DNA of 64,000 nt from Podarcis muralis. Its lineage: Eukaryota. Below, in pieces: positions 47,291 through 58,609 of this stretch. The DNA is taken from positions 53,072,001 to 53,136,000 of the forward strand of contig NC_135659.1 in the NCBI RefSeq assembly GCF_964188315.1, in the 5' to 3' direction. The translations under genes and the position numbers were made by a program. The notes below the pieces were generated by a model that was not told the DNA's origin, made no database searches, and was given only the letters and a program-made list of their open reading frames with translations. Position 1 is the first letter of the stretch. Every line of letters begins with the position of its first letter.

Positions 47291-49888
47291 TCAGTCAAAG
47301 CTTTCTTCTTTACGTGCAAGGATAGCTAAAGGAAACAAGAATGGATTCAAAGGGCAGATACCCAGAGTCTTCCAGTCCATGGCAGAGGCAGAAGTTGCAT
47401 CATCTTTGGAAGTGGTAGGAGAACTACTACTCTCCTCCTGTAGTGGTAAGCCACTTGTAGCTGGCTGCACATGCGGAAATAGCTCCCCATTATTGTTTAC
47501 AGGCTGGTTGCCCTCTTTCATTCTGCTTCTTTCACCTGTGTAGTGGGTGTTCAACTCTGTGTAACATTTGTGCATGTGACTCTTCAGCTTCTTAAAGTCC
47601 AGAAAGCCCAGCTCTTCTGGCAGTGACAGTAGCAAATCTAGTACCACAGCTGACTCTGCAGAAAGCAAGCAAAATGTATGAGGAGAGTGGCTACACTCAC
47701 TTTGGCAGAAACATAGGCAGGATTTTTTTATCTCCTGCTCTCCAGAGATTCTGCTCTTACAGATTCTGAAACTTCACCCTGCCTCCAACATGTGTAACAA
47801 ATGAAGTAGAAAATTTTCTCACATTAACAGCTAAGCTATTTTAGATTTTTAAAAATTATGTCTTAGAGGTTAAGGATAACTTTCTAAATAAGAAGTTTTA
47901 TTTTAAAAACTGGAAATCTGATGAGAACCTTTTATCTGTTTTACATTATATGACAAGTTGCTGCTTCCTCTCACCTAGGAAAACTCTACCTGTCTCCACA
48001 CTCACGGGCCACTCATATTTTCACTGGGTGGGGTGGGGAGAAACATAACAAACAATTCCCTTCTGAAATGTTTTCCTTAGTCCCTCAAATCCCACCCATC
48101 ATCCACAACAGTAACCTCAAAGGTTACCCAGCAAGGTGGTTGTTGCTTTTAGTAGCACTAAATATGTTGGAAGTTTTGGCAGAAGGAGTACAGTTTTTGG
48201 CAGGACACATAGTGTTTCCAGTCCTAGGGGATGCTCCATTTCTGGGAAGCGTTTTTAAGATTTAGTGTCCAGCCCTTCAGCTGAACTAGAACTCCACAGC
48301 CGATGACAAAAATGGCACAATAAAGAAAAAGCAACAGAATAAAAAGGAAGGGATGGAATGATTGCAAATAAAACTCAATAAGGCAGTTTCCATAAGGAGA
48401 AATGTTTTTGCCTGGCACGAATAATACAGTAGGCATGCTGTAATAGATGTCTTGGTTACCTGGAGTTACATTCAAGTGCAGAAACATTTCTTCCAGTAGC
48501 TGCCTGTTATTTAAATTCATCTTGGTCCAACACAAATGCCGACTTACCACATGGTGGGAGTTCAGGTGCCTTACAGCCACGTGAGATCACAGAAAGGTAC
48601 TTGTAGATCTTTTCAAAGTCCACATGGAACCCACTGTTTTCTGCAGGGGCTATTTCCTCTACATTTGATGATACAGTTGGTTCATGAGATTCTTCATCGG
48701 ATTTCCTACTCTCACTATGAAGATTTTGGGATGAACATTGAGAATTCTTTATCACCACTGACTTTGGAGGCACGGAATGGAGCAAGGTGAGTGGCTCAGT
48801 AGATGCAATTGTCCAAACCTAATGAGTAGAGAAAAAGTCACAATCAAGTATGGACTTTGTATGCCAAGTAGTCAGGGGTTCTCTAGTAAACCAAATACAT
48901 TTCCCAGCATTAAATCTGTCTGAAAAGTTATACAAGAACCAAGAGAACCAGGACAGAGCCATGTATTTCAGAGACATTTTGTCAGATGGAGACATACAGA
49001 TATCTTAAATTACTACACCAAGAACAATATCTATCTTATTAAGATCAGGGAAAAGGTTACCTGGGAAAAAGCAGTTGCCACAGCATCCTCAAGGGGACCT
49101 GTCAATTTCTCAGCTAACTCTGTCCATATCTAAAAAAAGGAAGTGTCAGTTGTGTGAATAGCCCTTAGCTTATGTTGTGCCATATCACATTACCTACACT
49201 TTTAAAACTCTCATACCTCAATAGGTGCTGGAATAGGAGCATCCTTCTGTTTACGCTGGCGATACTGATATTGTTCCTTGACTGCTTCCTTTGCCACACG
49301 CTCTTTCAGGTGCTCCACAAATGCCATGATCTGCAAGAGCAGCACAACTTAGGGGACATACATGGAATGTTTTGGGAAAGACACTATCTATCTTTCTGAA
49401 GACATAAAAGCTGAGCATTTCTTCAAGGCAGAAAGTTTGCAATTACTCCCCTTTAACTAGGATTTGCCAGTATGAATGTGTAGAGGATTAATAAAGGAGC
49501 ATAGGTCCTCTCCCAATTCATCCTCCCATGTCGTCCCTTATGATTTATCTGCCAAGGCCATCTAGCTCTCGTGGCTGACCAGAGATAGAGTCCTCGTCTC
49601 CAAACCCTGCATACTGGTCATCAGTCCGCCAACTCGTGGGGTTGTTAGGAAGCTCACAGCCCGGCCAAGTTCGAATCCTGCCCTCCACCACGTGGCCACG
49701 CCTCAACCCACCTCTTCTTCATCCCTCGAAGGCAGGTACTTCTTCAACAGCTCGGGCCGCAGCGGACCCTGGCCGTGAGCTCTCAAGGCCCGAAGAAGGC
49801 GTCGCTTTTCTGGGTCCGTCCAAGCCTGGCTCGTGGGGGCCGTCCTGTAGCGAGCAGGGGCTGAACGCTGCCTGGAAGGCGGCTTCAT
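47291..49888 (-). CDS. SNAPC2: snRNA-activating protein complex subunit 2 (SNAP45), 5 coding exons, ~331 aa
   Basis: Exons 49888-49712, 49330-49217, 49129-49061, 48818-48548, 47655-47291 (996 nt, in phase, TGA). MKPPSRQRSAPARY, PAPIEIWTELAEKLTGPLED, TIASTEPLTLLHS, VDFEKIYKYLS, ESAVVLDLLLSLPEEL and GICPLNPFLFPL match recalled SNAPC2. Probable non-coding first exon ending at 50038 (donor at 50036-50037; acceptor at 49893-49894). Confidence 0.94.
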
Positions 49889-50353
49889 GGCGCTGAGAAG
49901 AGAAAACAATATAAAGCTAAGAACCTAAAACACGCCCAGGGGTGTCAATTGCCACCCGCCCAGCACCTATTCTCTTTAGCCCCTCACCTCTAGCCACCCG
50001 TTCCTGGCTTCTAAGGCGACACAACGCTGCTCGTTACCTTCCGGTAGTCCTCAGTCCTCAAACACAACGCCGCCTAGTTTGCGAAAAGCCATTGCTTCCA
50101 GGTTGTCGCAATCGGATGACGTATAAAAACGCGCCGACGGGGGCCGCCGAGGACCAGAAACTATCAGAGGCGAAAGCAACCTTAGCAGCGTCTTCCGCTG
50201 GGACGGTGGCGGAGGTGGGTTCTAGAACGCCTCGACGTCACGAAGGAGCTCTAGGCTGCGTAGCAACCGCATGGCTCTTGCAGGGATTCCTGAGACCCCC
50301 CCGTTCTCACGGGGGGCTCTAGAATGGGACAGATCGCCCTTAAGTCTGGCTAC
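49889..50353. promoter_or_regulatory. CpG-island bidirectional promoter, SNAPC2/ZPBP-like gene
   Basis: 465 nt of CpG-rich sequence between divergent ATGs. CRE-like TGACGTA at 50117-50123 and CGACGTCA at 50233-50240; RFX half-site TAGCAAC at 50261-50267; ETS core CTTCCGG at 50038-50044. Confidence 0.65.
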
Positions 50354-53300
50354 ATGTCTTGCTGGTCGGCCGGCGTCGCTTTGGGGATCCTAGTCCTATT
50401 GCTGTGTGATGGGCCCGGTACGGAGAAGGGTGCTGTCGAGGGGCTAGGCTGCAACCGGGTGTCTCCTCGAGGATGTGGTGGTAGCACATCAGAGCTGCAG
50501 TCGCTTGTGAAAGAGCCAAGGGCACTGTCTCCTAAACGCCTGCCTGTTATACGAGTTTATTAATTCAATTAACATTCGAATCTGCCCTCAAAAACGGATG
50601 GAATCGCCTCGCAGGCAGCTCAAAAACACAATATTCTGGCCCGAAATGGCTCCTTCATGGAGCTAGAGAGCTGAATCGTGAAGTTCAATTTGAGACTTCT
50701 GAAACTGACTTTGTATATTGCTATCCTCCTGAGGTCTACCAAATGGTGTCAGGAGCAAGATCCTGGCTGGGGTGGGTGGACAGTACAGAGCCACATTGTA
50801 CAAAGGTGGCAGTGGGAACAGGATTGGCACCCCATGGAAAAGGGTGGCTCAGCAGGCAGAATTAGCTGTTCCACCCCACAAACCATACACTGGAATAAAC
50901 TACATACACAAATGAAAATGTATTGTAACAATAACTACATCAAAAAAATAAATATATAATTAATAATTCAACATCTAAGTTACTGCAGTTTAGGGATTTT
51001 AACACAGAATTCTAAAACTGGCCAGCGGCAGCCATTAATGCAATCCCATGTGTACTCAGAAGGAAGTCCTGTTGAATTTACTAGGGCTTCCTCTTGGGTA
51101 TGGTGTTAAGATTGCTGCCTACTTTCCAGGTGAGGAACACTGAGGCTGAGAGATAAGTGATTTCTATAAAGTCACCAATGGCAGATACAGTCATACCTCA
51201 GGTTACAGATGCTTCAGGTTGCATGTTTTCGGGTTGCACACCGCTCCAAACCCGGAAGTACAGGAATGGGTTACTTCTGGGTTCAGCACTCGTGCATGTG
51301 CAGAAACACTAAATCATGCTTTGCGCATGCACAGAAGTGCCAAATTGCAACCCACGTGTGCGCAGACGCGGCACTGTGAGTTGCGAACGCTGCACGGATC
51401 ACGTTCGCAACCCAAGCGTCCACTGTATATATCAGTTTTACTCGCTGTTGTGGAAATACTCTGTGTCATCCGGGGATTTGCCAGTATATCCCAATTTAAC
51501 TTCCGACTCTCCCTGGTCAAAACACAGGAGCTCTGGGGTGGGTTTCAGACCGCACAATGTACCATGAAGCTGGGAACTACCGTTTTATGAACACACAGAT
51601 ACAGCAGACAAGTCTGTAATGATACTTTCCAAAGGAGGGATCATGCTGAAGTCTGCTCCTTTTCAGGCTGTGGACTTCACCTTGACTTGTCTGACAATGG
51701 AACTCCTGCAGGACTGGCACGTGTTAGAAAGACAGCTGGAGAGATTGGTGAGAATGTAATAAAGATCAGTTCCATTTAGCTGACACTGCACTAAGTAAAA
51801 TAAACAAGCAATAAATGGGGACATCGTCTGATCAGCTCGATCCACTGTGGCCTTGTTTCATCCATCTTCAGTGGCCATCTGATCTGTGCCTTGAATCCAT
51901 GGCCTTGGCACTGTGCTCTGGCCACCTGAGCTAGCCAAGCGATAGGTGATCATTAGATGATTTGAGCCCATTAACACAAAGCCCAACCAAGAACCTTGTT
52001 TTCCCATTGCCCTATCACCAATGCCAAATTGATTCTGATTTATTCGTTATTTACTAAATTTAGTAAAAATTTATTAAAAAGCCCAAGACAGAGTACACAG
52101 CTCTTCCACCTTCCATTTATCTTCATGGCAACTCTATGAGGTAGATTAGGCTGAGAGGTAGTGGCTGGCTCAAGGTCATCTAGGGAGCTTCATGGCCAAG
52201 GGAGGATTTGAACCCAGGTCTTCTTGGTTCTAGTCAGACGTGCAAACCACTATATCTGCCTATTTTTTCAGACACCATCTTTATCCACATTGGTGCCAAG
52301 GAATTTACTATCCCCTGCAAGTCTTCAGAGATGGATGTTGTGATTGGTATGAATCCCACCTACAACTGGAGCCTGGAAAATGAAGGTTAGGCCTTATTGC
52401 TTGGGACTCTAGGATCTTTCAGTAGATGTCAGGGACAGATGTGTGAGGGAAAGAAGAGGATGGATTACTTGGGAAAAGGCACCTGTTGGTGTCCCAGGCC
52501 TGCCAATGTTTTTTCTAGAATGATCAGCAACAGAGATTTTTTTGCACCTCAGACTGATTTGAACTTTAGCACCCAAGATAAATATTTCCCAAGCATTTTA
52601 TGTTGAGAATTAGTTTAGTCTTGCCTATGCCCTCTGTGTCCTTGTGCCTTGGGCAAGAGCCCATGTTATGTCTGTCCTCCTCCTAATGCTACAGAGAGGC
52701 CATTATGTGGCTAAATTTGGAGTGAGTGGGGATTGGGCCATGTGGATTTCATTAAGGAGCCCATCTTTACCTCTTATACCAGTTCAATCCCTGCTTGGGG
52801 TGAGGCTTGAAGATGCATGAAAAGGTAACTTGCAAACACATTGATGCATCTGTTAAGTTTCCCAGATGTGAAACCAAGTTGACCTGAAACTGACCGCGTC
52901 TGGAGAGATTATTCTTCGCAACAGGCATATTGGCAAAAACATCAGAACTACTGGAAATGAAATTGACCCAGAGCTCAGCTTTTTAAGGTTCCTGTTACTT
53001 AAAAGTTATGACTGAAGCAAGCTGTGAGACAACTGACTTTTCCAAACCCAAAACTTGGTTGTAAAATAGTATCAGCATGTCACAAAATATTGACTAACTG
53101 TACCTGCCAATCTAAGCTACCCAGTGCATGGTTCCTATAATAAGAAAATACGGTGTAGAATGTCGGGATTCAAGAAAGGTATTTTGTATGGGCATTCATG
53201 GCATAAGGGCAGCAGAAAATAATTAGACTCTCTCAATGCATCCATGTACCAATGAGCCGAGAGCCACATGAAGCTATAGAAGTATTAAAAGACAGGGGGT

Positions 53301-56300
53301 TTCTCTTGACCTCAGTATTGGTGCCTAAGCTGGTTGTAACAGAACATTGTTCTCCTTAGGCTGATTCTGCCCTCTACTTTCAGGAACCCATCCCCTCAGT
53401 GGTGATGCTTCCCTGACTCTACATGATTTTCATACTGATGACAGTGGACTGTATGTCTGCACAGTCTCCTACACCACGGATGGCCAGCTCCATACTAAAA
53501 CTTTCTATCACACAGTGGTGGGTGAGTGGATTCCAGATGTCTTGAAGGATAGTGAAACAAAGGGGGCTGAACTATTTGACTAGATGGGTGATTGGCTGGA
53601 ACCAGGAGGAAGCTAGTGGAGGGGGGGGGGGACATATACTGGGAGAAATTTTGGCCTGTGGCCAGACGCTGTGGCCAAACATAGGTGGTTTCTCTGTTCT
53701 CCTAAGGATCCACTGTCTTTCTTAGGTGTTTACAATTTCTTTCCGTACTCTTTAACTTCTTAATAGTGGACATGATGTGGAAGATGTGACTTTTGCCGTC
53801 TTTTGAGCTCCTGTTTTTGTAGGAGAAGCTGCCTTCCAGATTCCCCTTCCTCTGCCTCTTTCCCCAGGCTACCACATACGTGCAGAGCTGCACGTCCTAC
53901 TGCTTTTTCAGTGCAACTCTTGCGATGAGGAATTGACGCACGGGTTCCTGAAGACCCTGCGAGAGCATCTGAGCGAGGTGGTGCACCACCTCCACTGTGA
54001 ACTTCTGCTTGGCGCCATCAGCTGCTTCCCCACCATGGAGAAACCCTTGGATGAGTTCAACTTCCAGGTAGAGCTTGAAGGTCAGAGCCAAGAAATTCAG
54101 GGTGTTTCTAGACGATGGCAGTCAGGTTGGCTGGGTTCAGTCACAGTTTGGGGAGGAAGTGAAGTTTGGAGCAGGAGAGGCTCGTGCAGAAAGGCAGGAT
54201 TTCACCAGCTAGGACTGCCTACTGAAAACACCAGAAGTAAGTGTAGCCTCAGTGTGTGTCTTTGCTGAGAACAGACAGATTTTGGGTAAAGGTACATTCC
54301 CTTGGATTGGCCGGAGGAACATTTCTTAAGCAGCAAGGGTGGCAATGGATATGTATCATGATCTGGAGGGTTGCGCTAAGTTGAATTAACATAATTTACT
54401 GCATTCATGCAAGCATCATATAGTGGATCTGTTTTGCCATATCCTGGAATGAGGGTTTGGACTCTGTGTGCACAGATGGAAGAGCGAGCCTATTGGCAAA
54501 GGGACCGTAACATATTTATCATTGTTTTCTAGTATCTCCTTTTGGGAAGGGCTGGGATAAGTTCTGCTCCCCCAAGGCTGATGCACTGGAATTTGATTGT
54601 TATAATGGAGCTGTCTTGAGCAATCTGCAGCAGGTACGTCACCAAACCTCATCTCTCCCCTACCAGGAAATAAGTTTGCTGGGGCTTTGTACCTACATAT
54701 GTTGCTGAGCTGCAAAGGGAAACCATGTCTTTTATCTTCTGGAACAAGGCTAATGTGCATCGCTGCACATGGAATGACTGGGGTTATTTACTTTGAGGCA
54801 ATACAAGCAAGAATCGCATGGTTATGCATATTTCGAAGAAACGATGGGTGCTTGCATTCTAGGCATTTACAATGGAATTGCCACGTTTTGTTCACTCACT
54901 CTTGTGATGACCCTGTCTTCAGATTCTTATCCTTCTCTGTTTTCCCTGCAATCCTGTTTTCCTTCCCTTTTCAGAAAAACAGATCAATAACAAAAAGCAG
55001 ACCTCCCAGTCTTCCTTCCCCCACTCTTGAACCACCCTATGCATCTCCCTACAGGCCGAGGAAGCAATAACCATATTCATGGAGAACAACAAACGTTTCC
55101 CCTTGGGAGAGGCGCCCACCTCCCGCACCTCCTTCGTCAACACCTTTGTCAACTTCCTGGAGGGTGGAACATGCCTGGAAGGTTATGGACAGACCCCGGA
55201 GCTACAGGCACGCTGTCCCGACTGCTGTAGTGAGTGGAGCAGGTGATCCATGAGCTGCTGCCTCATCCCTCCTCAGACGCTGCCTCTGGTCCCATAGGCT
55301 GCAGTGTTTGTTCATGCCACTGGGAAGCCTCTCGCCACATTTGTTCTTAGCTGTCACCCCAGCCTTTGCAAACCCAGTGCCTTCCAGATGTTTTGGAACA
55401 CAACTCCCACCAGCCCCAAAACATCTGGAGAGCACTGGGTTTGTAATGGCTCTCTTCTCTCTACCTTCCCTTCCTCTAGAGCAGTGTTTCCCAACCTTGG
55501 GTCTCCAGCTGTTTTTGGAGTACAACTCCCATCATCCCTAGCTAGCAAGACCAGTGGTCAGGGATGATGGGAACTGTCATCTGAAAACAGCTGGAGACCC
55601 AAGGTTGGGAAAGACTGTTCTAGAGTTTCACTGTAGCTCTGCCAGGTGCCCTTGGGCTGTGTACACTTTAGTTTTCACCCCTCGTGGAGCTATATTTCTC
55701 AGCAACCTTAACAAACTACAGTTCCCAATATTTTTTGGGGGAAGTCACGTGCTTTAAATGCATGGTGTGTACACAGCCCTTGGATCCGACCTGTAATTCC
55801 ATCCAGTCAGAGCTATTTTGTCCACCTGTTTAACACATTGCACTAAGCATGACTCCCTCGACTCCAGGAAGAGACATCTTCTCCACAACTCCTTTGAGGA
55901 GCACAATTGAAAAACGATGCCCCTTGGGTAGGGCTCACACGGTATGCGGCCAGCTTTGAAAACCCTCTCTCCCTAATCCCTCCCCACCCCTCCAGCTTAG
56001 CTGATGGAGGAATGAAACCTGTGTGCTGTCTATATTTCAGGCTCTGCTTCTTTCGCTCCCCCCTCCATGCCTTTATCTGCCATTTTGCTTGACAGCTGCG
56101 TGCCCTCCTGGAACATATAGTGTGTCTGCAGCTGGAAATTGTGTTCCCTGCCCAAACGGATCATACAGCCTGCGCTATGGGGCAACTGTGTGCATTCAGT
56201 GCTACCACAACGGGTCAACCTTGCACCCTGCTGCCAGAACAGCTGCAGAATGCATGAGCCCAGAAGGTATGTATCAGGTGGGAGACATGAGGAAGGGCTT

Positions 56301-58609
56301 CCTGAGAGACCTCTCTGGATTTTCCAGCACTGGTTCTTGGATTTAGCATGCTGAGAGTCAAGCTAGACGCAACGTAAAATATGTTCAAGGTTTTAAAAAA
56401 TGCACATAGCATCAGCTGTGTGGCTGGGGCTGATAAGTATCATGATTGTAGGGGGTGAAGGGGGGGATTTTAACACTTTCCTTGCCACAGTCCTGAGAAA
56501 AATCCCTCCTCTGAAATTGGGAAGATTTGCTGCAAAGGGGAATTTCTTCCCAATGGAAATACTAGCTCCAGAGGAGGGATTTACTTCAGTCCTGGATGCT
56601 GGACTTGAATTAGTTTCCTTGGTTCTGTGTTTTATTTAAAAGGTGGCCCCTCACCTGGGTAACAGACAAAGTGATGTAGAAGTAAATTCTTACCACAAGA
56701 CTCACAACAGGAGAGTTAAATTTCACCTCCTGTGATCGTGTTAATTATCCATCTTCCCTAAGGTGATGCTCTGTATACTTAATGCCCCCTCAAGCCTGTA
56801 TGTTAAATCCAAAGACAGATTTATCTTCAGATGGCTATGTTCCACCTCCACTATTGGCTGTTGCACTCGTGTCCTGCTTGCAGGCTTCCTGCAGACCTCA
56901 GTGAGAACAAGATGCTGAAGGAGGTGGTCCTTTGGCCTGATCTAGCAAGGCTTTTCTTGTGTTCTTAGGTACCTAAGAAACAGCGCTCCTAGACTGCAAC
57001 CATATATACGAGCATCTAGTGAGGGAACAGTTCTGCGCATGTGTGAATTTGGTCCAAACAGTGTTTGTTTATACTGGCTGCCTATTTCCCTTTGGCCTTT
57101 CTTTCCACTGTGATACTTAAGCTCACCTGCTGTTTAACTTAATAGAGGCAGGTGCTACTGCTGGATAGGCAGCTTGGCTCTGGGTGCTGAGGAGAACTGG
57201 CACTCTTGAGTGATCTGTGTCTCTTTCCACGCAGTCCCTCCAACACATGGGTTTCCTGCTCTGTTGGTGATCTTTGTCGTCCTGCTGCTTACTTGCCTCT
57301 GTATCATTGTGCTGTGAGTTCTGGGTTTTCTTCTTTCCTGTCTAAGCCCACTTCTGTAAAATTTGGTGGGCCAAAGAGATGTGTGGCTGGGCATTAAGTG
57401 AGGGCAGGGTCCCAAGAAATGACAGTGGCTGTGCAACCAGTTAGCACAGATAATTGGGGGTGGGGGGTGCCTAGGGAATGCCTCCACTACGGGATCATAT
57501 ATCTGCACCACCAGTTCTCTACTTTCCTGGCTTCTGGGACTAGAGTGCACCAAACAGGTATTGCTTTCATTCCACCTTTGCCCTTCCTCTGAATACAGCC
57601 CCCTTGCATAGTTTCCCCACATGCCTTTCTACAATTTGATTATTATCACTTTTCAGTAACCACCACCTGATCCTGGCCAAGATACCCCAACCAGCATATC
57701 CTAACCCAGGGGTCAGCAACCTTTTTCAGCCATGGGCCGGTCCACCGTCCCTCAGACCATGTGGTTGGCCGGACTATATTTTGAAAATAATAATAATGAA
57801 TGAATTCCTATGCCCCACAAATAACCCAGAGATGCATTTTAAATAAAAGCACACACTCCACTCATGTAAAAACACGCTGATTCCCAGACTGTCCGCGGGC
57901 TGGATTGAGAAGGCGATTGGGCTGCACCCGGTCCACGGGCCTTGGGTTGCCTACCCCTGCCCTAACCCAACAGAGTTCTTGGGCAAGGGGGATGTTACCA
58001 CTTTCCTATGAATCTGGCTTCCATATTCCTTATATGTGTCCCTCCCTGTATTTTGCTCATGGGGTTCTGGGCAACCAGAGCTGTATGGGAGGGGTGCCTA
58101 CTAAGATCCACATGCCTTATGGTAATAAAGATTCCCTGTCTCTGTGCAGCTGCTGCTGGTACTTCCGCCGTAGAAGGAAGAAGAAACAGGATTCTTTTCC
58201 TAAAGGTGATGGCGAGACCAAGCAGGAAAAAGAAGTCACAGTCCTTGCTGTTCCGGACTCCCCAAAAGATGACTCTCCCCTGTTGCCTTCTATCACTTTG
58301 GAGAATCCTGACAAAGATGACTCTCCCCTGTTGCCTTCTCCCACTTTGGAGAATGCTGAAAAAGATGACTCTCCCTTGTTGCCTTCTATTACTTTGGAGA
58401 ATCCTGACAAAGATGACTCTCCCCTGTTTCCTTCTCCCACTTTGGAGAATCCTGACCAAGAAGGTGTCATGTTTCCAACTCCTCCCAATCCAGAGGAAGA
58501 GCCAGGTGGGGCTATTTTGCCGCCCCTTTTTGAGCTAGAAGAGCAGCCTGTTATTGAAAATGTTGTGTTCCCATCATCCTCACCTGTCTCAGATTTTGAA
58601 AGTACATGA
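50354..58609 (+). CDS. Unnamed ZPBP/Sp38-like type I transmembrane protein, 10 coding exons, ~531 aa
   Basis: Exons 50354-50417 (signal peptide MSCWSAGVALGILVLLLCDGP; an in-frame ATG also at 50324), 51667-51747, 52272-52385, 53384-53521, 53868-54080, 54533-54633, 55055-55229, 56096-56266, 57235-57313 (TM), 58150-58609. All introns are GT-AG and the phases join into one 1596-nt ORF. Features: Ig-like C...W...DSGLYVC; CNSC...LSEVVHHLHCEL and CLEGYG...RCPDCC resembling ZPBP1/2; ACPPGTYS...CVPCPNGSYS...CIQC Cys-rich module; hydrophobic ALLVIFVVLLLTCLCIIVLCCW followed by RRRRKKK. Family assignment is from recalled ZPBP motifs. Confidence 0.82.
51188..51425. mobile_element. Tigger-like MITE in ZPBP-like gene intron 1
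   Basis: TA|CAGTCATACCTCAGGTTAC...CCCAAGCGTCCACTG|TA; internal AACCCGGAAGT related to 15424-15648. Confidence 0.7.
52115..52245 (+). mobile_element. MIR/CORE-like SINE remnant
   Basis: GAGGTAGATTAGGCTGAGAG...CAAGGTCATCTAG...GGATTTGAACCCAGGTCT core-like segment. Confidence 0.55.
55482..55617. mobile_element. Palindromic hAT-type MITE
   Basis: CAGTGTTTCCCAACCTTGGGTCTCCAGCTGTTTT...AAAACAGCTGGAGACCCAAGGTTGGGAAAGACTG long inverted repeat. TSD CTCTAGAG/TTCTAGAG fits the NTCTAGAN hAT target. Confidence 0.8.
55654..55779. mobile_element. MITE with GGGCTGTGTACAC terminal inverted repeats (possibly Harbinger-type)
   Basis: Perfect 13-bp inverted ends; TSD unclear. Confidence 0.5.
57707..57959. mobile_element. 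hAT (Charlie-like) MITE in ZPBP-like gene intron 9
   Basis: CAGGGGTCAGCAACC...GGTTGCCTACCCCTG ends, TSD TCCTAACC/CCCTAACC. Internal sequence shared with 28932-29183. Confidence 0.85.
58265..58456 (+). repeat. Coding minisatellite, 4 x 48 bp (16-aa KDDSPLLPS[I/P]TLENPD)
   Basis: Units at 58265, 58313, 58361 and 58409, in frame within the last exon of the ZPBP-like gene. Confidence 0.95.

What the first reader, a model, noticed from the sequence alone, without database searches (positions are those of the whole stretch)
50354..58609. Membrane-anchored ZPBP/Sp38-like protein: a candidate third zona-pellucida-binding paralog with a receptor-like architecture
Seen: ten small exons, mostly missed by the ORF track, join through GT-AG sites into one 531-aa ORF. 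It runs from signal peptide to Ig-like domain (TIPC...PTYNW...SLTLHDFHTDDSGLYVC), helical/Cys region (CNSC...LSEVVHHLHCEL...CLEGYG...RCPDCC), Cys-rich ACPPGTYS...CVPCPNGSYS...CIQC module, a ~22-aa TM helix, an RRRRKKK stop-transfer, and a ~150-aa acidic Pro/Ser-rich tail. Known (from recall): mammalian ZPBP1/ZPBP2 share the order Ig, CNS...L..LV.DLSCE, C.PGYG...CPECC, C.PG.Y, but are soluble acrosomal-matrix proteins with no TM or tail and lie at other loci. Inference: this is a divergent, tethered family member, possibly a squamate sperm-surface or acrosomal-membrane egg-coat receptor. Its Ig-plus-TM layout is reminiscent of gamete-fusion proteins such as IZUMO1/SPACA6/TMEM81, but that link is speculative.
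Basis: partly seen in the sequence, partly recalled or inferred. Interest (0 to 1): 0.88.

Follow-up and report, generated by a model that had tools for sequence, protein, structure and literature searches.

The report
Membrane-anchored third ZPBP gene of reptiles/birds
This wall-lizard gene is real and encodes a membrane-anchored relative of the two sperm acrosome proteins ZPBP1 and ZPBP2; gene databases already predict it across lizards, snakes, turtles, crocodilians and birds, but I found no study of it and its role in sperm is untested.

Summary
Ten GT-AG exons (50354-58609, + strand) join into one 531-aa ORF. RefSeq isoform X1 of Podarcis muralis LOC114599148 has the same sequence plus 10 N-terminal residues from an upstream ATG at 50324.

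The protein has a signal peptide, a linker, an Ig domain, a beta-alpha-beta-beta-alpha-beta domain, a Cys-rich EGF_Sp38_C/Ephrin_rec_like module, one TM helix, a basic stop-transfer and an acidic repeat tail.

The ZPBP link holds. EGF_Sp38_C passes Pfam's threshold. The eight best Foldseek matches in Swiss-Prot are all ZPBP1/ZPBP2 entries (E about 1e-19, 17-25% identity).

It is a third paralog, not ZPBP1 or ZPBP2. Chicken has separate ZPBP1 and ZPBP2 entries as well as a 508-aa TM ortholog. The lizard gene lies beside SNAPC2 and PIF1.

It is neither squamate-specific nor unannotated. Orthologs with the same TM layout occur in snakes, turtle, alligator and many birds, usually auto-named "ZPBP2-like". 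The gene tree follows the species tree, and lacertid dN/dS is about 0.14-0.53.

No non-sauropsid ortholog, human third member or paper was found. A sperm or egg-coat receptor role is untested, and the IZUMO/SPACA6/TMEM81 link is not supported. Interest is moderate.

The parts
50324..50417 (+).
   Evidence: P0152 equals MGQIALKSGY plus the model. The N-terminus is hydrophobic (KD >1.6 at residues 1-9). The donor is GT at 50418.
51667..51747 (+). Exon 2: 27-aa linker after the signal peptide, with one N-glycosylation sequon (NGT)
   Evidence: It is disordered in the AF2 model (pLDDT <50 for residues 1-25).
52272..52385 (+). Exon 3: first half of the Ig domain (strand B Cys, the Trp of YNW)
53384..53521 (+). 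Exon 4: second half of the Ig domain (DSGLYVC)
   Evidence: V-set E 3.9e-6; Sp38 N-terminal Ig 17.2 bits, below the 23.1 cut-off. RefSeq isoform X2 (P0058) skips this exon.
53868..54080 (+). Exon 5: first beta-alpha-beta of the central alpha/beta domain
   Evidence: for secondary structure. An exhaustive HMMER search with this exon returned 13 hits: 10 fetched ones, of which the named are sauropsid and two are unnamed bird-like fragments, and 3 long multi-stretch proteins.
54533..54633 (+). Exon 6: central domain (invariant WD..C and CY)
55055..55229 (+). Exon 7: long helix and last strands of the central domain, then the GYGQT...CPDCC start of the Cys module
   Evidence: EGF_Sp38_C begins here.
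56096..56266 (+). Exon 8: complete Ephrin_rec_like (GCC2/GCC3) module
   Evidence: PF07699 40.5 bits against a cut-off of 23.1, covering profile positions 1-48 of 48.
57235..57313 (+). Exon 9: transmembrane helix
   Evidence: hydropathy 3.5 at residues 362-380. The exon is skipped in the predicted soluble isoforms: P. muralis X3 (P0001, sequence seen) and Pogona X3 (P0020, tail seen); P. raffonei X3 by same-cluster membership only.
58150..58609 (+). Exon 10: CCWYF-RRRRKKK stop-transfer, acidic Pro/Ser-rich tail with a 48-bp x4.1 tandem repeat (58265-58461), conserved C-terminal ...VVFPSSSPVSDFEST, and the stop codon
49600..50450 (.). CpG island spanning SNAPC2 exon 1 (- strand, ATG at 49909) and exon 1 of this gene: a probable shared bidirectional promoter
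   Evidence: GC 0.59, CpG o/e 0.82. SNAPC2 Pfam hits on the - strand; the same PIF1 / SNAPC2 / gene order in three other lacertids.

Best explanation
This is LOC114599148 of the wall lizard Podarcis muralis. It is an intact, expressed-looking, single-copy gene for a type I membrane glycoprotein whose ectodomain is a full ZPBP/Sp38 module. The module has an Ig domain, a beta-alpha-beta-beta-alpha-beta domain and a Cys-rich EGF_Sp38_C module.

ZPBP1 and ZPBP2 stop part-way through the Cys module. This protein instead continues through a complete Ephrin_rec_like (GCC2/GCC3) repeat into a TM helix, a basic/Cys juxtamembrane stretch and a fast-evolving acidic cytoplasmic tail.

It is a third paralog of the ZPBP family, inherited vertically since at least the common ancestor of squamates, turtles, crocodilians and birds. 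It appears to be absent from the human proteome.

Shown here: the gene model, architecture, family relationship, paralogy, distribution and purifying selection.

Inferred, at roughly 40-45% likelihood: like ZPBP1/2, it acts in spermatids and sperm as a membrane-tethered ZPBP module. It would be sorted from the Golgi into the acrosomal membrane, where it would organise acrosomal matrix and/or bind the egg coat. Skipping of the TM exon would yield a soluble, ZPBP1/2-like form.
For: Gene model:
- Ten GT-AG exons give one 531-aa ORF, identical to RefSeq isoform X1 apart from the start codon.

Family relationship:
- On the window's own ectodomain, EGF_Sp38_C scores 30.3 bits (cut-off 24) and Ephrin_rec_like 35.3 bits (cut-off 23.1).
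- All 36 orthologs match both families, and 25 of 36 match the Sp38 N-terminal Ig domain.
- The AF2 ectodomain model has pLDDT 81.5 and pTM 0.71.
- Foldseek against Swiss-Prot gives ZPBP1/ZPBP2 of human, mouse, rat, pig and chicken as ranks 1-8. E is 2e-19 to 1e-17 over 296-356 aligned residues; the next hit is at 4e-8.
- The ESM Atlas gives the same neighbours.

Third paralog:
- Chicken ZPBP2 (Q6PVW7, 352 aa) and ZPBP1 (Q6Q2W4) are only 21% identical to the lizard model.
- Chicken also has XP_430256.4 (508 aa); the chicken cluster representative P0092 shows the TM layout and is 37% identical.
- The locus is flanked by SNAPC2 and PIF1.

Conserved TM layout:
- Found in Pogona, Rhineura, Sceloporus, Anolis, snakes, turtle, alligator, chicken, duck and tinamou.

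Vertical descent and selection:
- The gene tree follows the species tree.
- Four lacertid CDSs are intact, with omega 0.14-0.53 overall and 0.12-0.38 in the ectodomain.

C-terminal difference from ZPBP1/2:
- ZPBP1/2 C-termini align to model residues 306-311, inside the 279-326 Ephrin_rec_like match.
Against: - No expression or localisation data were available, so the sperm or acrosome role rests only on family analogy.
- The TSS lies in a CpG island shared with the housekeeping gene SNAPC2. This fits broad expression as well as germline expression.
- In the lizard, the Sp38 N-terminal Ig profile is below Pfam's threshold (16-17 bits against 23.1).
- TM-scores to ZPBP1/2 models are only 0.40-0.53. 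I attribute this to differing domain orientations, but I did not test domain by domain.
- I could not fetch ZPBP1/2 sequences, so there is no joint phylogeny.
- The cytoplasmic tail is poorly conserved between squamates and birds, so tail-based sorting ideas are weak.
Confidence: 0.8

Rival explanations
1. It is simply the sauropsid ortholog of ZPBP2 (or ZPBP1), as most automatic names say, and has gained a C-terminal extension.
For: Database names read 'zona pellucida-binding protein 2-like', 'ZPBP2 protein, partial' and 'zona pellucida-binding protein 1'. Human ZPBP2 is the top fold hit, but by a negligible margin.
Against: - Swiss-Prot holds separate chicken ZPBP2 (352 aa) and ZPBP1 entries, each about 21% identical to the lizard model. 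The chicken TM protein is 488-508 aa and 37% identical.
- ZPBP1 and ZPBP2 match equally well, at 17-25% identity.
- The neighbours are SNAPC2 and PIF1. Human ZPBP2 lies with GSDMB and ORMDL3 at 17q12-q21 (abstract of PMC3374122).
- PMC7647744, citing Lin et al. 2007, states that ZPBP1 and ZPBP2 coexist in birds.
Confidence: 0.05
2. It is a somatic cell-surface receptor or adhesion molecule, for example immune or epithelial. It shares the ZPBP ectodomain fold but has nothing to do with fertilisation.
For: - Its layout (Ig, Cys-rich module, TM, tail) is a type I receptor-like architecture.
- The promoter is a CpG island shared with SNAPC2.
- The ectodomain fold recurs in non-reproductive proteins: thyroglobulin residues 1189-1517, SCUBE1/2, and invertebrate SVEP1-like proteins.
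- The moderately raised omega also fits immune genes.
Against: The two closest relatives are both spermatid acrosomal proteins (review PMC7827414). No signalling domain or known motif was found in the tail (no Pfam hit). The evidence against is weak, and this rival remains open.
Confidence: 0.3
3. It is a decaying duplicate or an annotation artefact, with exons chained by chance.
For: Several predicted isoforms are aberrant. X2 skips half of the Ig domain and X3 has a frameshifted tail.
Against: - The ORF is intact in four lacertids, with omega below 1.
- The ten-exon join of the window gives a protein that aligns end to end with full-length orthologs across Sauropsida; exon hits in the same order were also seen in guinea fowl and alligator loci.
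- Forty-four ectodomain columns are invariant across 36 species, including 16 cysteines.
- The AF2 model is confident.
Confidence: 0.02

Closest known systems
ZPBP1 (sp38/IAM38) and ZPBP2, the vertebrate acrosomal zona-pellucida-binding proteins
   Same: - The same three-part ectodomain in the same order: Ig, alpha/beta domain, Cys-rich EGF_Sp38_C.
- Pfam EGF_Sp38_C is above threshold.
- They are the best fold matches across model residues 1-311.
- They share motifs such as GYG...CP(D/E)CC.
   Different: - Only 17-25% sequence identity.
- ZPBP1/2 are 320-352 aa and end inside the Ephrin_rec_like repeat, with no TM helix. This protein completes the repeat and adds a TM helix, a basic stop-transfer and a tail of about 146 aa.
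- It has a separate locus (SNAPC2/PIF1).
- It is present in sauropsids, and no third family member appears among the listed top 30 Swiss-Prot hits, which include the human ZPBP1/2 entries.
- Its expression and function are unknown.
Automatically annotated sauropsid 'ZPBP2-like' proteins (e.g. chicken XP_430256.4, duck XP_012958194, Pogona XP_020638856, alligator KYO46517.1)
   Same: They are orthologs of this gene with the same domain order and TM anchor. They are 35-65% identical in the ectodomain, and the gene tree matches the species tree.
   Different: Their cytoplasmic tails differ widely in length, repeats and composition. The names are inconsistent (ZPBP1, ZPBP2, ZPBP2-like, uncharacterized, Ig-like domain-containing).
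Thyroglobulin hinge/type-2-repeat region (about residues 1189-1517) and the SCUBE spacer plus Cys-rich region
   Same: Thyroglobulin is the only solved structure that aligns across all three ectodomain parts (Foldseek E 8.6e-9, VIA Z 9.5 over 224 residues). SCUBE models give TM 0.53. Both contain Ephrin_rec_like repeats.
   Different: Identity is only 12-17%. These regions are embedded in very large secreted proteins of unrelated function. The similarity is at fold level only, and homology is not shown.
IZUMO1 / SPACA6 / TMEM81 gamete-fusion proteins
   Same: They are type I membrane proteins with an Ig domain near the membrane.
   Different: There is no Izumo four-helix-bundle domain. None of them is listed among the fold-search hits shown. 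Izumo-Ig matched only 1 of 36 orthologs at E<=0.001; its one recorded score is sub-threshold. The resemblance is generic.

Membership tests
ZPBP/Sp38 family (Pfam PF07354 + PF20626) | C-terminal EGF-like domain EGF_Sp38_C (PF20626) above the gathering score | tested here: met
   The window's own ectodomain scores 30.3 bits against a cut-off of 24. All 36 orthologs match at E<=0.001.
ZPBP/Sp38 family (Pfam PF07354 + PF20626) | N-terminal Sp38 Ig domain (PF07354) above the gathering score | tested here: inconclusive
   The lizard protein scores 16-17 bits against a cut-off of 23.1. Bird orthologs pass (28.7 bits), and 25 of 36 orthologs match at E<=0.001.
ZPBP/Sp38 family (Pfam PF07354 + PF20626) | Whole-ectodomain fold like ZPBP1/2 | tested here: met
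   Foldseek ranks 1-8 in Swiss-Prot are all ZPBP1/2, with E 2e-19 to 1e-17 and 296-356 aligned residues. TM-scores of 0.40-0.53 are modest.
ZPBP/Sp38 family (Pfam PF07354 + PF20626) | Secreted or acrosomal-matrix protein without a membrane anchor | tested here: not met
   There is a hydropathy peak of 3.5 at residues 362-380 followed by RRRRKKK. The TM helix is conserved in the full-length orthologs that I read.
ZPBP/Sp38 family (Pfam PF07354 + PF20626) | Spermatid-specific expression and acrosomal localisation | not testable with these tools
   No expression data were reachable, and no paper on this gene was found.
Orthology with ZPBP1 or ZPBP2 | Being the only ZPBP1 or ZPBP2 copy of the species, at the conserved locus | tested here: not met
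   Chicken has separate ZPBP1 and ZPBP2 Swiss-Prot entries plus the TM ortholog. The neighbours here are SNAPC2 and PIF1. A joint tree could not be built.
Ephrin_rec_like / GCC2_GCC3 repeat proteins (PF07699) | A complete 48-position Cys-rich repeat above threshold | tested here: met
   The exon alone scores 40.5 bits against a cut-off of 23.1, covering profile positions 1-48 of 48. All 36 orthologs match.
IZUMO / SPACA6 / TMEM81 superfamily | N-terminal Izumo four-helix bundle joined to an Izumo-type Ig domain | tested here: not met
   No helix bundle appears in the model. No family member is listed among the fold hits shown. Izumo-Ig scores 18.1 bits against 26.7 in the one ortholog with a recorded score.

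The most novel reading that the evidence does not exclude
Reptiles and birds keep an unstudied third ZPBP gene that mammals appear to lack, and it tethers the ZPBP module to a membrane. It could be the integral-membrane partner that holds the acrosomal matrix or egg-coat-binding machinery on the inner acrosomal membrane in sauropsids. With its complete GCC2/GCC3 repeat and TM helix, it could also represent the ancestral membrane-bound form, from which the soluble ZPBP1/2 arose by truncation. Skipping of the TM exon could switch between tethered and secreted forms.
Probability: 0.3. Interest if true: 0.7.

Novelty: new variant of a known kind. Interest (0 to 1): 0.45.

Why it matters
ZPBP1 and ZPBP2 are needed for acrosome formation and are implicated in egg-coat binding in mammals. 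ZPBP1 sits on the inner acrosomal membrane without an anchor of its own (review PMC7827414).

A conserved, membrane-anchored family member in birds and reptiles would have several consequences:
- It gives a candidate for sperm-egg coat interaction or acrosome assembly that can be tested directly in chicken.
- It shows that the family has three ancient members rather than two.
- It warns that many bird 'ZPBP2' annotations refer to a different gene. Evolutionary-rate or proteome studies that use those annotations may therefore be affected.

If the gene proves to be somatic, it is still an uncharacterised receptor-like protein that has been kept across all the main living sauropsid groups.

Tried and rejected
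- **ESM Atlas search with exon 5 alone**: only noise, scores of 0.53 or less.
Repeating with the ectodomain-only alignment A2 recovered the birds. It still found no ZPBP1/2, amphibian, fish or mammal sequences, because this tool needs shared 5-mers.
- **Joint phylogeny with ZPBP1/2**: not possible, since no tool could return those sequences and I did not type them from memory.
- **Synteny outside squamates**: the 10-kb flanks of the guinea fowl and alligator loci show no SNAPC2 or PIF1 and no convincing coding ORFs.
- **The look-up of encoding contigs**: failed for chicken P0092 and turtle P0056.
- **Literature**: seven searches found no paper on this gene. Lin et al. 2007 (PMC2099232) is not held. 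PMC3434135 does not mention ZPBP.
- **IZUMO/SPACA6/TMEM81 link**: rejected (see the membership test).
- **Acidic dileucine DDSPLL repeats as a conserved sorting signal**: rejected. They occur in lacertids and once in Rhineura, but not in agamids, iguanians, snakes, turtle, alligator or birds.

Full report
**1. The observation**

The window comes from the wall lizard Podarcis muralis. I re-derived the gene model from the sequence. Ten exons on the + strand are each bounded by AG...GT with pyrimidine-rich acceptors:

| Exon | Coordinates |
|---|---|
| 1 | 50354-50417 |
| 2 | 51667-51747 |
| 3 | 52272-52385 |
| 4 | 53384-53521 |
| 5 | 53868-54080 |
| 6 | 54533-54633 |
| 7 | 55055-55229 |
| 8 | 56096-56266 |
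| 9 | 57235-57313 |
| 10 | 58150-58609 |

- RefSeq XP_028589638.2 (LOC114599148 isoform X1, 541 aa) is identical apart from ten extra N-terminal residues. These come from an in-frame ATG at 50324, which has the better Kozak context.
- The feature is therefore real, and it is already a predicted RefSeq gene. An earlier record version was named 'zona pellucida-binding protein 2-like'; the current one is 'uncharacterized protein'.

**2. Anatomy**

- Hydropathy shows two hydrophobic segments: the N-terminal signal sequence, and residues about 359-384 (19-residue mean of 3.5). The second is followed by RRRRKKK.
- The mature ectodomain has 19 cysteines and four N-glycosylation sequons.
- I built an AlphaFold2 model of the window's own ectodomain (P0001:33-362) from 36 orthologs. 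It has mean pLDDT 81.5 and pTM 0.71. It shows:
  - a disordered linker (exon 2);
  - a seven-strand Ig sandwich (exons 3-4);
  - a small disulfide-rich module (end of exon 7 plus exon 8).
- The tail is 146 aa with net charge -19 and is rich in Pro, Glu, Asp and Ser. It contains a 48-bp x4.1 tandem repeat at 58265-58461.

**3. Family relationship**

- Pfam on single exons gave Ephrin_rec_like on exon 8 (40.5 bits against 23.1) and weak Sp38 hits.
- On the whole ectodomain, EGF_Sp38_C scores 30.3 bits (cut-off 24) and Ephrin_rec_like 35.3 bits. The Sp38 N-terminal Ig profile stays below threshold in the lizard (16-17 bits against 23.1) but passes in birds.
- Across 36 orthologs, 36, 36 and 25 match Ephrin_rec_like, EGF_Sp38_C and Sp38 respectively.
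- Foldseek against Swiss-Prot AlphaFold models places eight ZPBP1/ZPBP2 entries (human, mouse, rat, pig, chicken) at ranks 1-8. E is 2e-19 to 1e-17, with 296-356 aligned residues and 17-25% identity. Thyroglobulin follows at 4e-8.
- The ESM Atlas agrees, by sequence features and by shape.
- The ZPBP1/2 models end opposite model residues 306-311, inside the 279-326 Ephrin_rec_like match. The soluble paralogs therefore stop part-way through a repeat that this protein completes before entering the membrane.

**4. A third paralog, not ZPBP1 or ZPBP2**

- Chicken has Swiss-Prot ZPBP2 (Q6PVW7, 352 aa) and ZPBP1 (Q6Q2W4). Each is 21% identical to the lizard model.
- Chicken also has XP_430256.4 (508 aa); the chicken cluster representative P0092 (488 aa) shows a TM helix and is 37% identical to the lizard ectodomain.
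- PMC7647744, citing Lin et al. 2007, states that ZPBP1 and ZPBP2 coexist in birds.
- The lizard gene lies head-to-head with SNAPC2. Their ATGs are 415 bp apart within one CpG island (GC 0.59, CpG o/e 0.82). PIF1 lies beyond SNAPC2.
- The same order is found in P. raffonei, Zootoca and Lacerta.
- Human ZPBP2 lies with GSDMB and ORMDL3 at 17q12-q21 (abstract of PMC3374122).

**5. Distribution and selection**

- An exhaustive HMMER search of 1.84 billion representative proteins with exon 5 returned 13 hits. I fetched ten: the named ones are lizard, snake, alligator and bird, and two are unnamed fragments that resemble the bird sequences. The other three are long multi-stretch proteins that I took for noise.
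- Word-seeded searches added many more squamates, a turtle, an alligator and about 60 bird species. Most are auto-named 'ZPBP2-like' or 'ZPBP2 protein, partial'.
- Every full-length ortholog that I read keeps the same order: signal peptide, Ig, alpha/beta domain, Cys module, TM helix, then a basic or Cys-rich juxtamembrane stretch.
- Forty-four ectodomain columns are invariant across 36 species, including 16 cysteines.
- A maximum-likelihood tree of the 36 ectodomains largely follows the species tree. Squamates separate from alligator, turtle and birds, and within birds the split is palaeognaths, Galloanserae, Neoaves. This indicates one vertically inherited gene.
- I rebuilt the CDS in three other lacertids. 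All are intact, with 3-5 tail repeat copies.
- Nei-Gojobori omega is 0.14-0.53 overall and 0.12-0.38 for the ectodomain. It is lowest in the alpha/beta domain. This is purifying selection at a rather relaxed or fast rate.
- No non-sauropsid ortholog was found, and the listed top 30 Swiss-Prot fold hits, which include human ZPBP1/2, show no third member. Amphibians, fishes and non-placental mammals were not excluded, because the searches available were limited.

**6. Isoforms**

- RefSeq predicts TM-exon-skipping isoforms in P. muralis (X3, sequence read) and Pogona (X3, 368 aa, C-terminus read); a P. raffonei X3 sits in the same 90% cluster as the P. muralis one.
- Skipping the 79-nt exon shifts the frame of the last exon. 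The product would be a secreted ectodomain with a short or nonsense tail.
- Whether these isoforms are abundant is unknown.

**7. Mechanism**

- Shown: this is a type I membrane glycoprotein that displays a ZPBP-type ectodomain.
- Inferred from the family: ZPBP1 is an acrosomal protein that coats the inner acrosomal membrane and binds the zona. Zpbp1-null mice are infertile because the acrosome does not compact properly (review PMC7827414). By analogy, the TM paralog most plausibly works in spermatids and sperm as a tethered ZPBP module in the acrosomal membrane. I put this at about 40-45%.
- The main rival, at about 30%, is a somatic receptor or adhesion role. This fits the CpG-island promoter shared with SNAPC2. 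It also fits the recurrence of the fold in thyroglobulin, SCUBE and invertebrate SVEP1-like proteins.
- The DDSPLL acidic-dileucine repeats noted in a neighbouring finding are confined to lacertids, with one copy in Rhineura. They cannot be the conserved function of the tail.
- Only a short C-terminal ...FP..SPVSD-like stretch is shared by squamates and a tinamou. Alligator and turtle carry a related ...FVFP... stretch.

**8. Novelty and verdict**

- Seven literature searches found no paper that describes this gene or a membrane-anchored ZPBP. Sequence databases hold it only under inconsistent automatic names.
- It is therefore an unstudied, membrane-anchored variant of a known family.
- The IZUMO/SPACA6/TMEM81 comparison is not supported.
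- Interest is moderate. The gene is a concrete, testable candidate for bird and reptile fertilisation biology, and it corrects many 'ZPBP2' annotations.

Noticed in passing
window 47291-49909 (- strand) and 36608-~46000 (+ strand): SNAPC2 (Pfam PF11035 on three exons) lies head-to-head with the ZPBP-like gene. PIF1 (PH_LRR1 and PIF1 helicase domains) lies tail-to-tail with SNAPC2. The order PIF1 / SNAPC2 / ZPBP-like gene is conserved in four lacertids. From memory, the human genes are on chromosomes 15 and 19.
   Followed up: partly
window 49600-50450: An 850-bp CpG island (GC 0.59, CpG o/e 0.82) covers the first exons of both SNAPC2 and the ZPBP-like gene. Their ATGs are 415 bp apart, so the promoter is probably bidirectional.
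   Followed up: partly
window 58265-58461; L003-L005 last exons: The 16-aa tail repeat (...KDDSPLLPSxTLENPD...) varies in copy number among lacertids: 3 in Lacerta, 4 in P. muralis and Zootoca, 5 in P. raffonei. In Zootoca it has changed to DYSPRL. The repeat evolves quickly, and its dileucine is not conserved.
   Followed up: yes
model mb9c7a7668b6d against PDB 7n4y_A and 6scj_A: The whole ZPBP-type ectodomain (Ig, alpha/beta domain, GCC2/GCC3) superposes on thyroglobulin residues about 1189-1517. It also matches the spacer and Cys-rich region of SCUBE1/2. I saw no mention of a structural link between ZPBPs and thyroglobulin or SCUBE in the papers I read.
   Followed up: partly
AFDB cluster hits (A0A4W3JR19, A0A803THP3, R7T448): A 364-aa Ephrin_rec_like protein and a 430-aa protein match at 23-25% identity through the complete Cys module and extend about 150 residues further. 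An annelid Ig-like protein also matches. These hint at older or additional long-form ZPBP-like genes. The sequences could not be fetched.
   Followed up: no
window 55229-55246; P0043 (Pogona X4), P0053 (Varanus): Read-through of the exon 7 donor gives a short soluble isoform ending ...CPDCCSEWS.... This is annotated in Pogona and Varanus. In the window the read-through frame stops after 5 codons.
   Followed up: partly
bird entries: [quoted passage not shown] Studies that rely on those names may refer to the wrong gene. Possible examples are the rapid-evolution or positive-selection reports on 'ZPBP2' in sparrows and tortoises (PMC6993853, PMC12225707).
   Followed up: no
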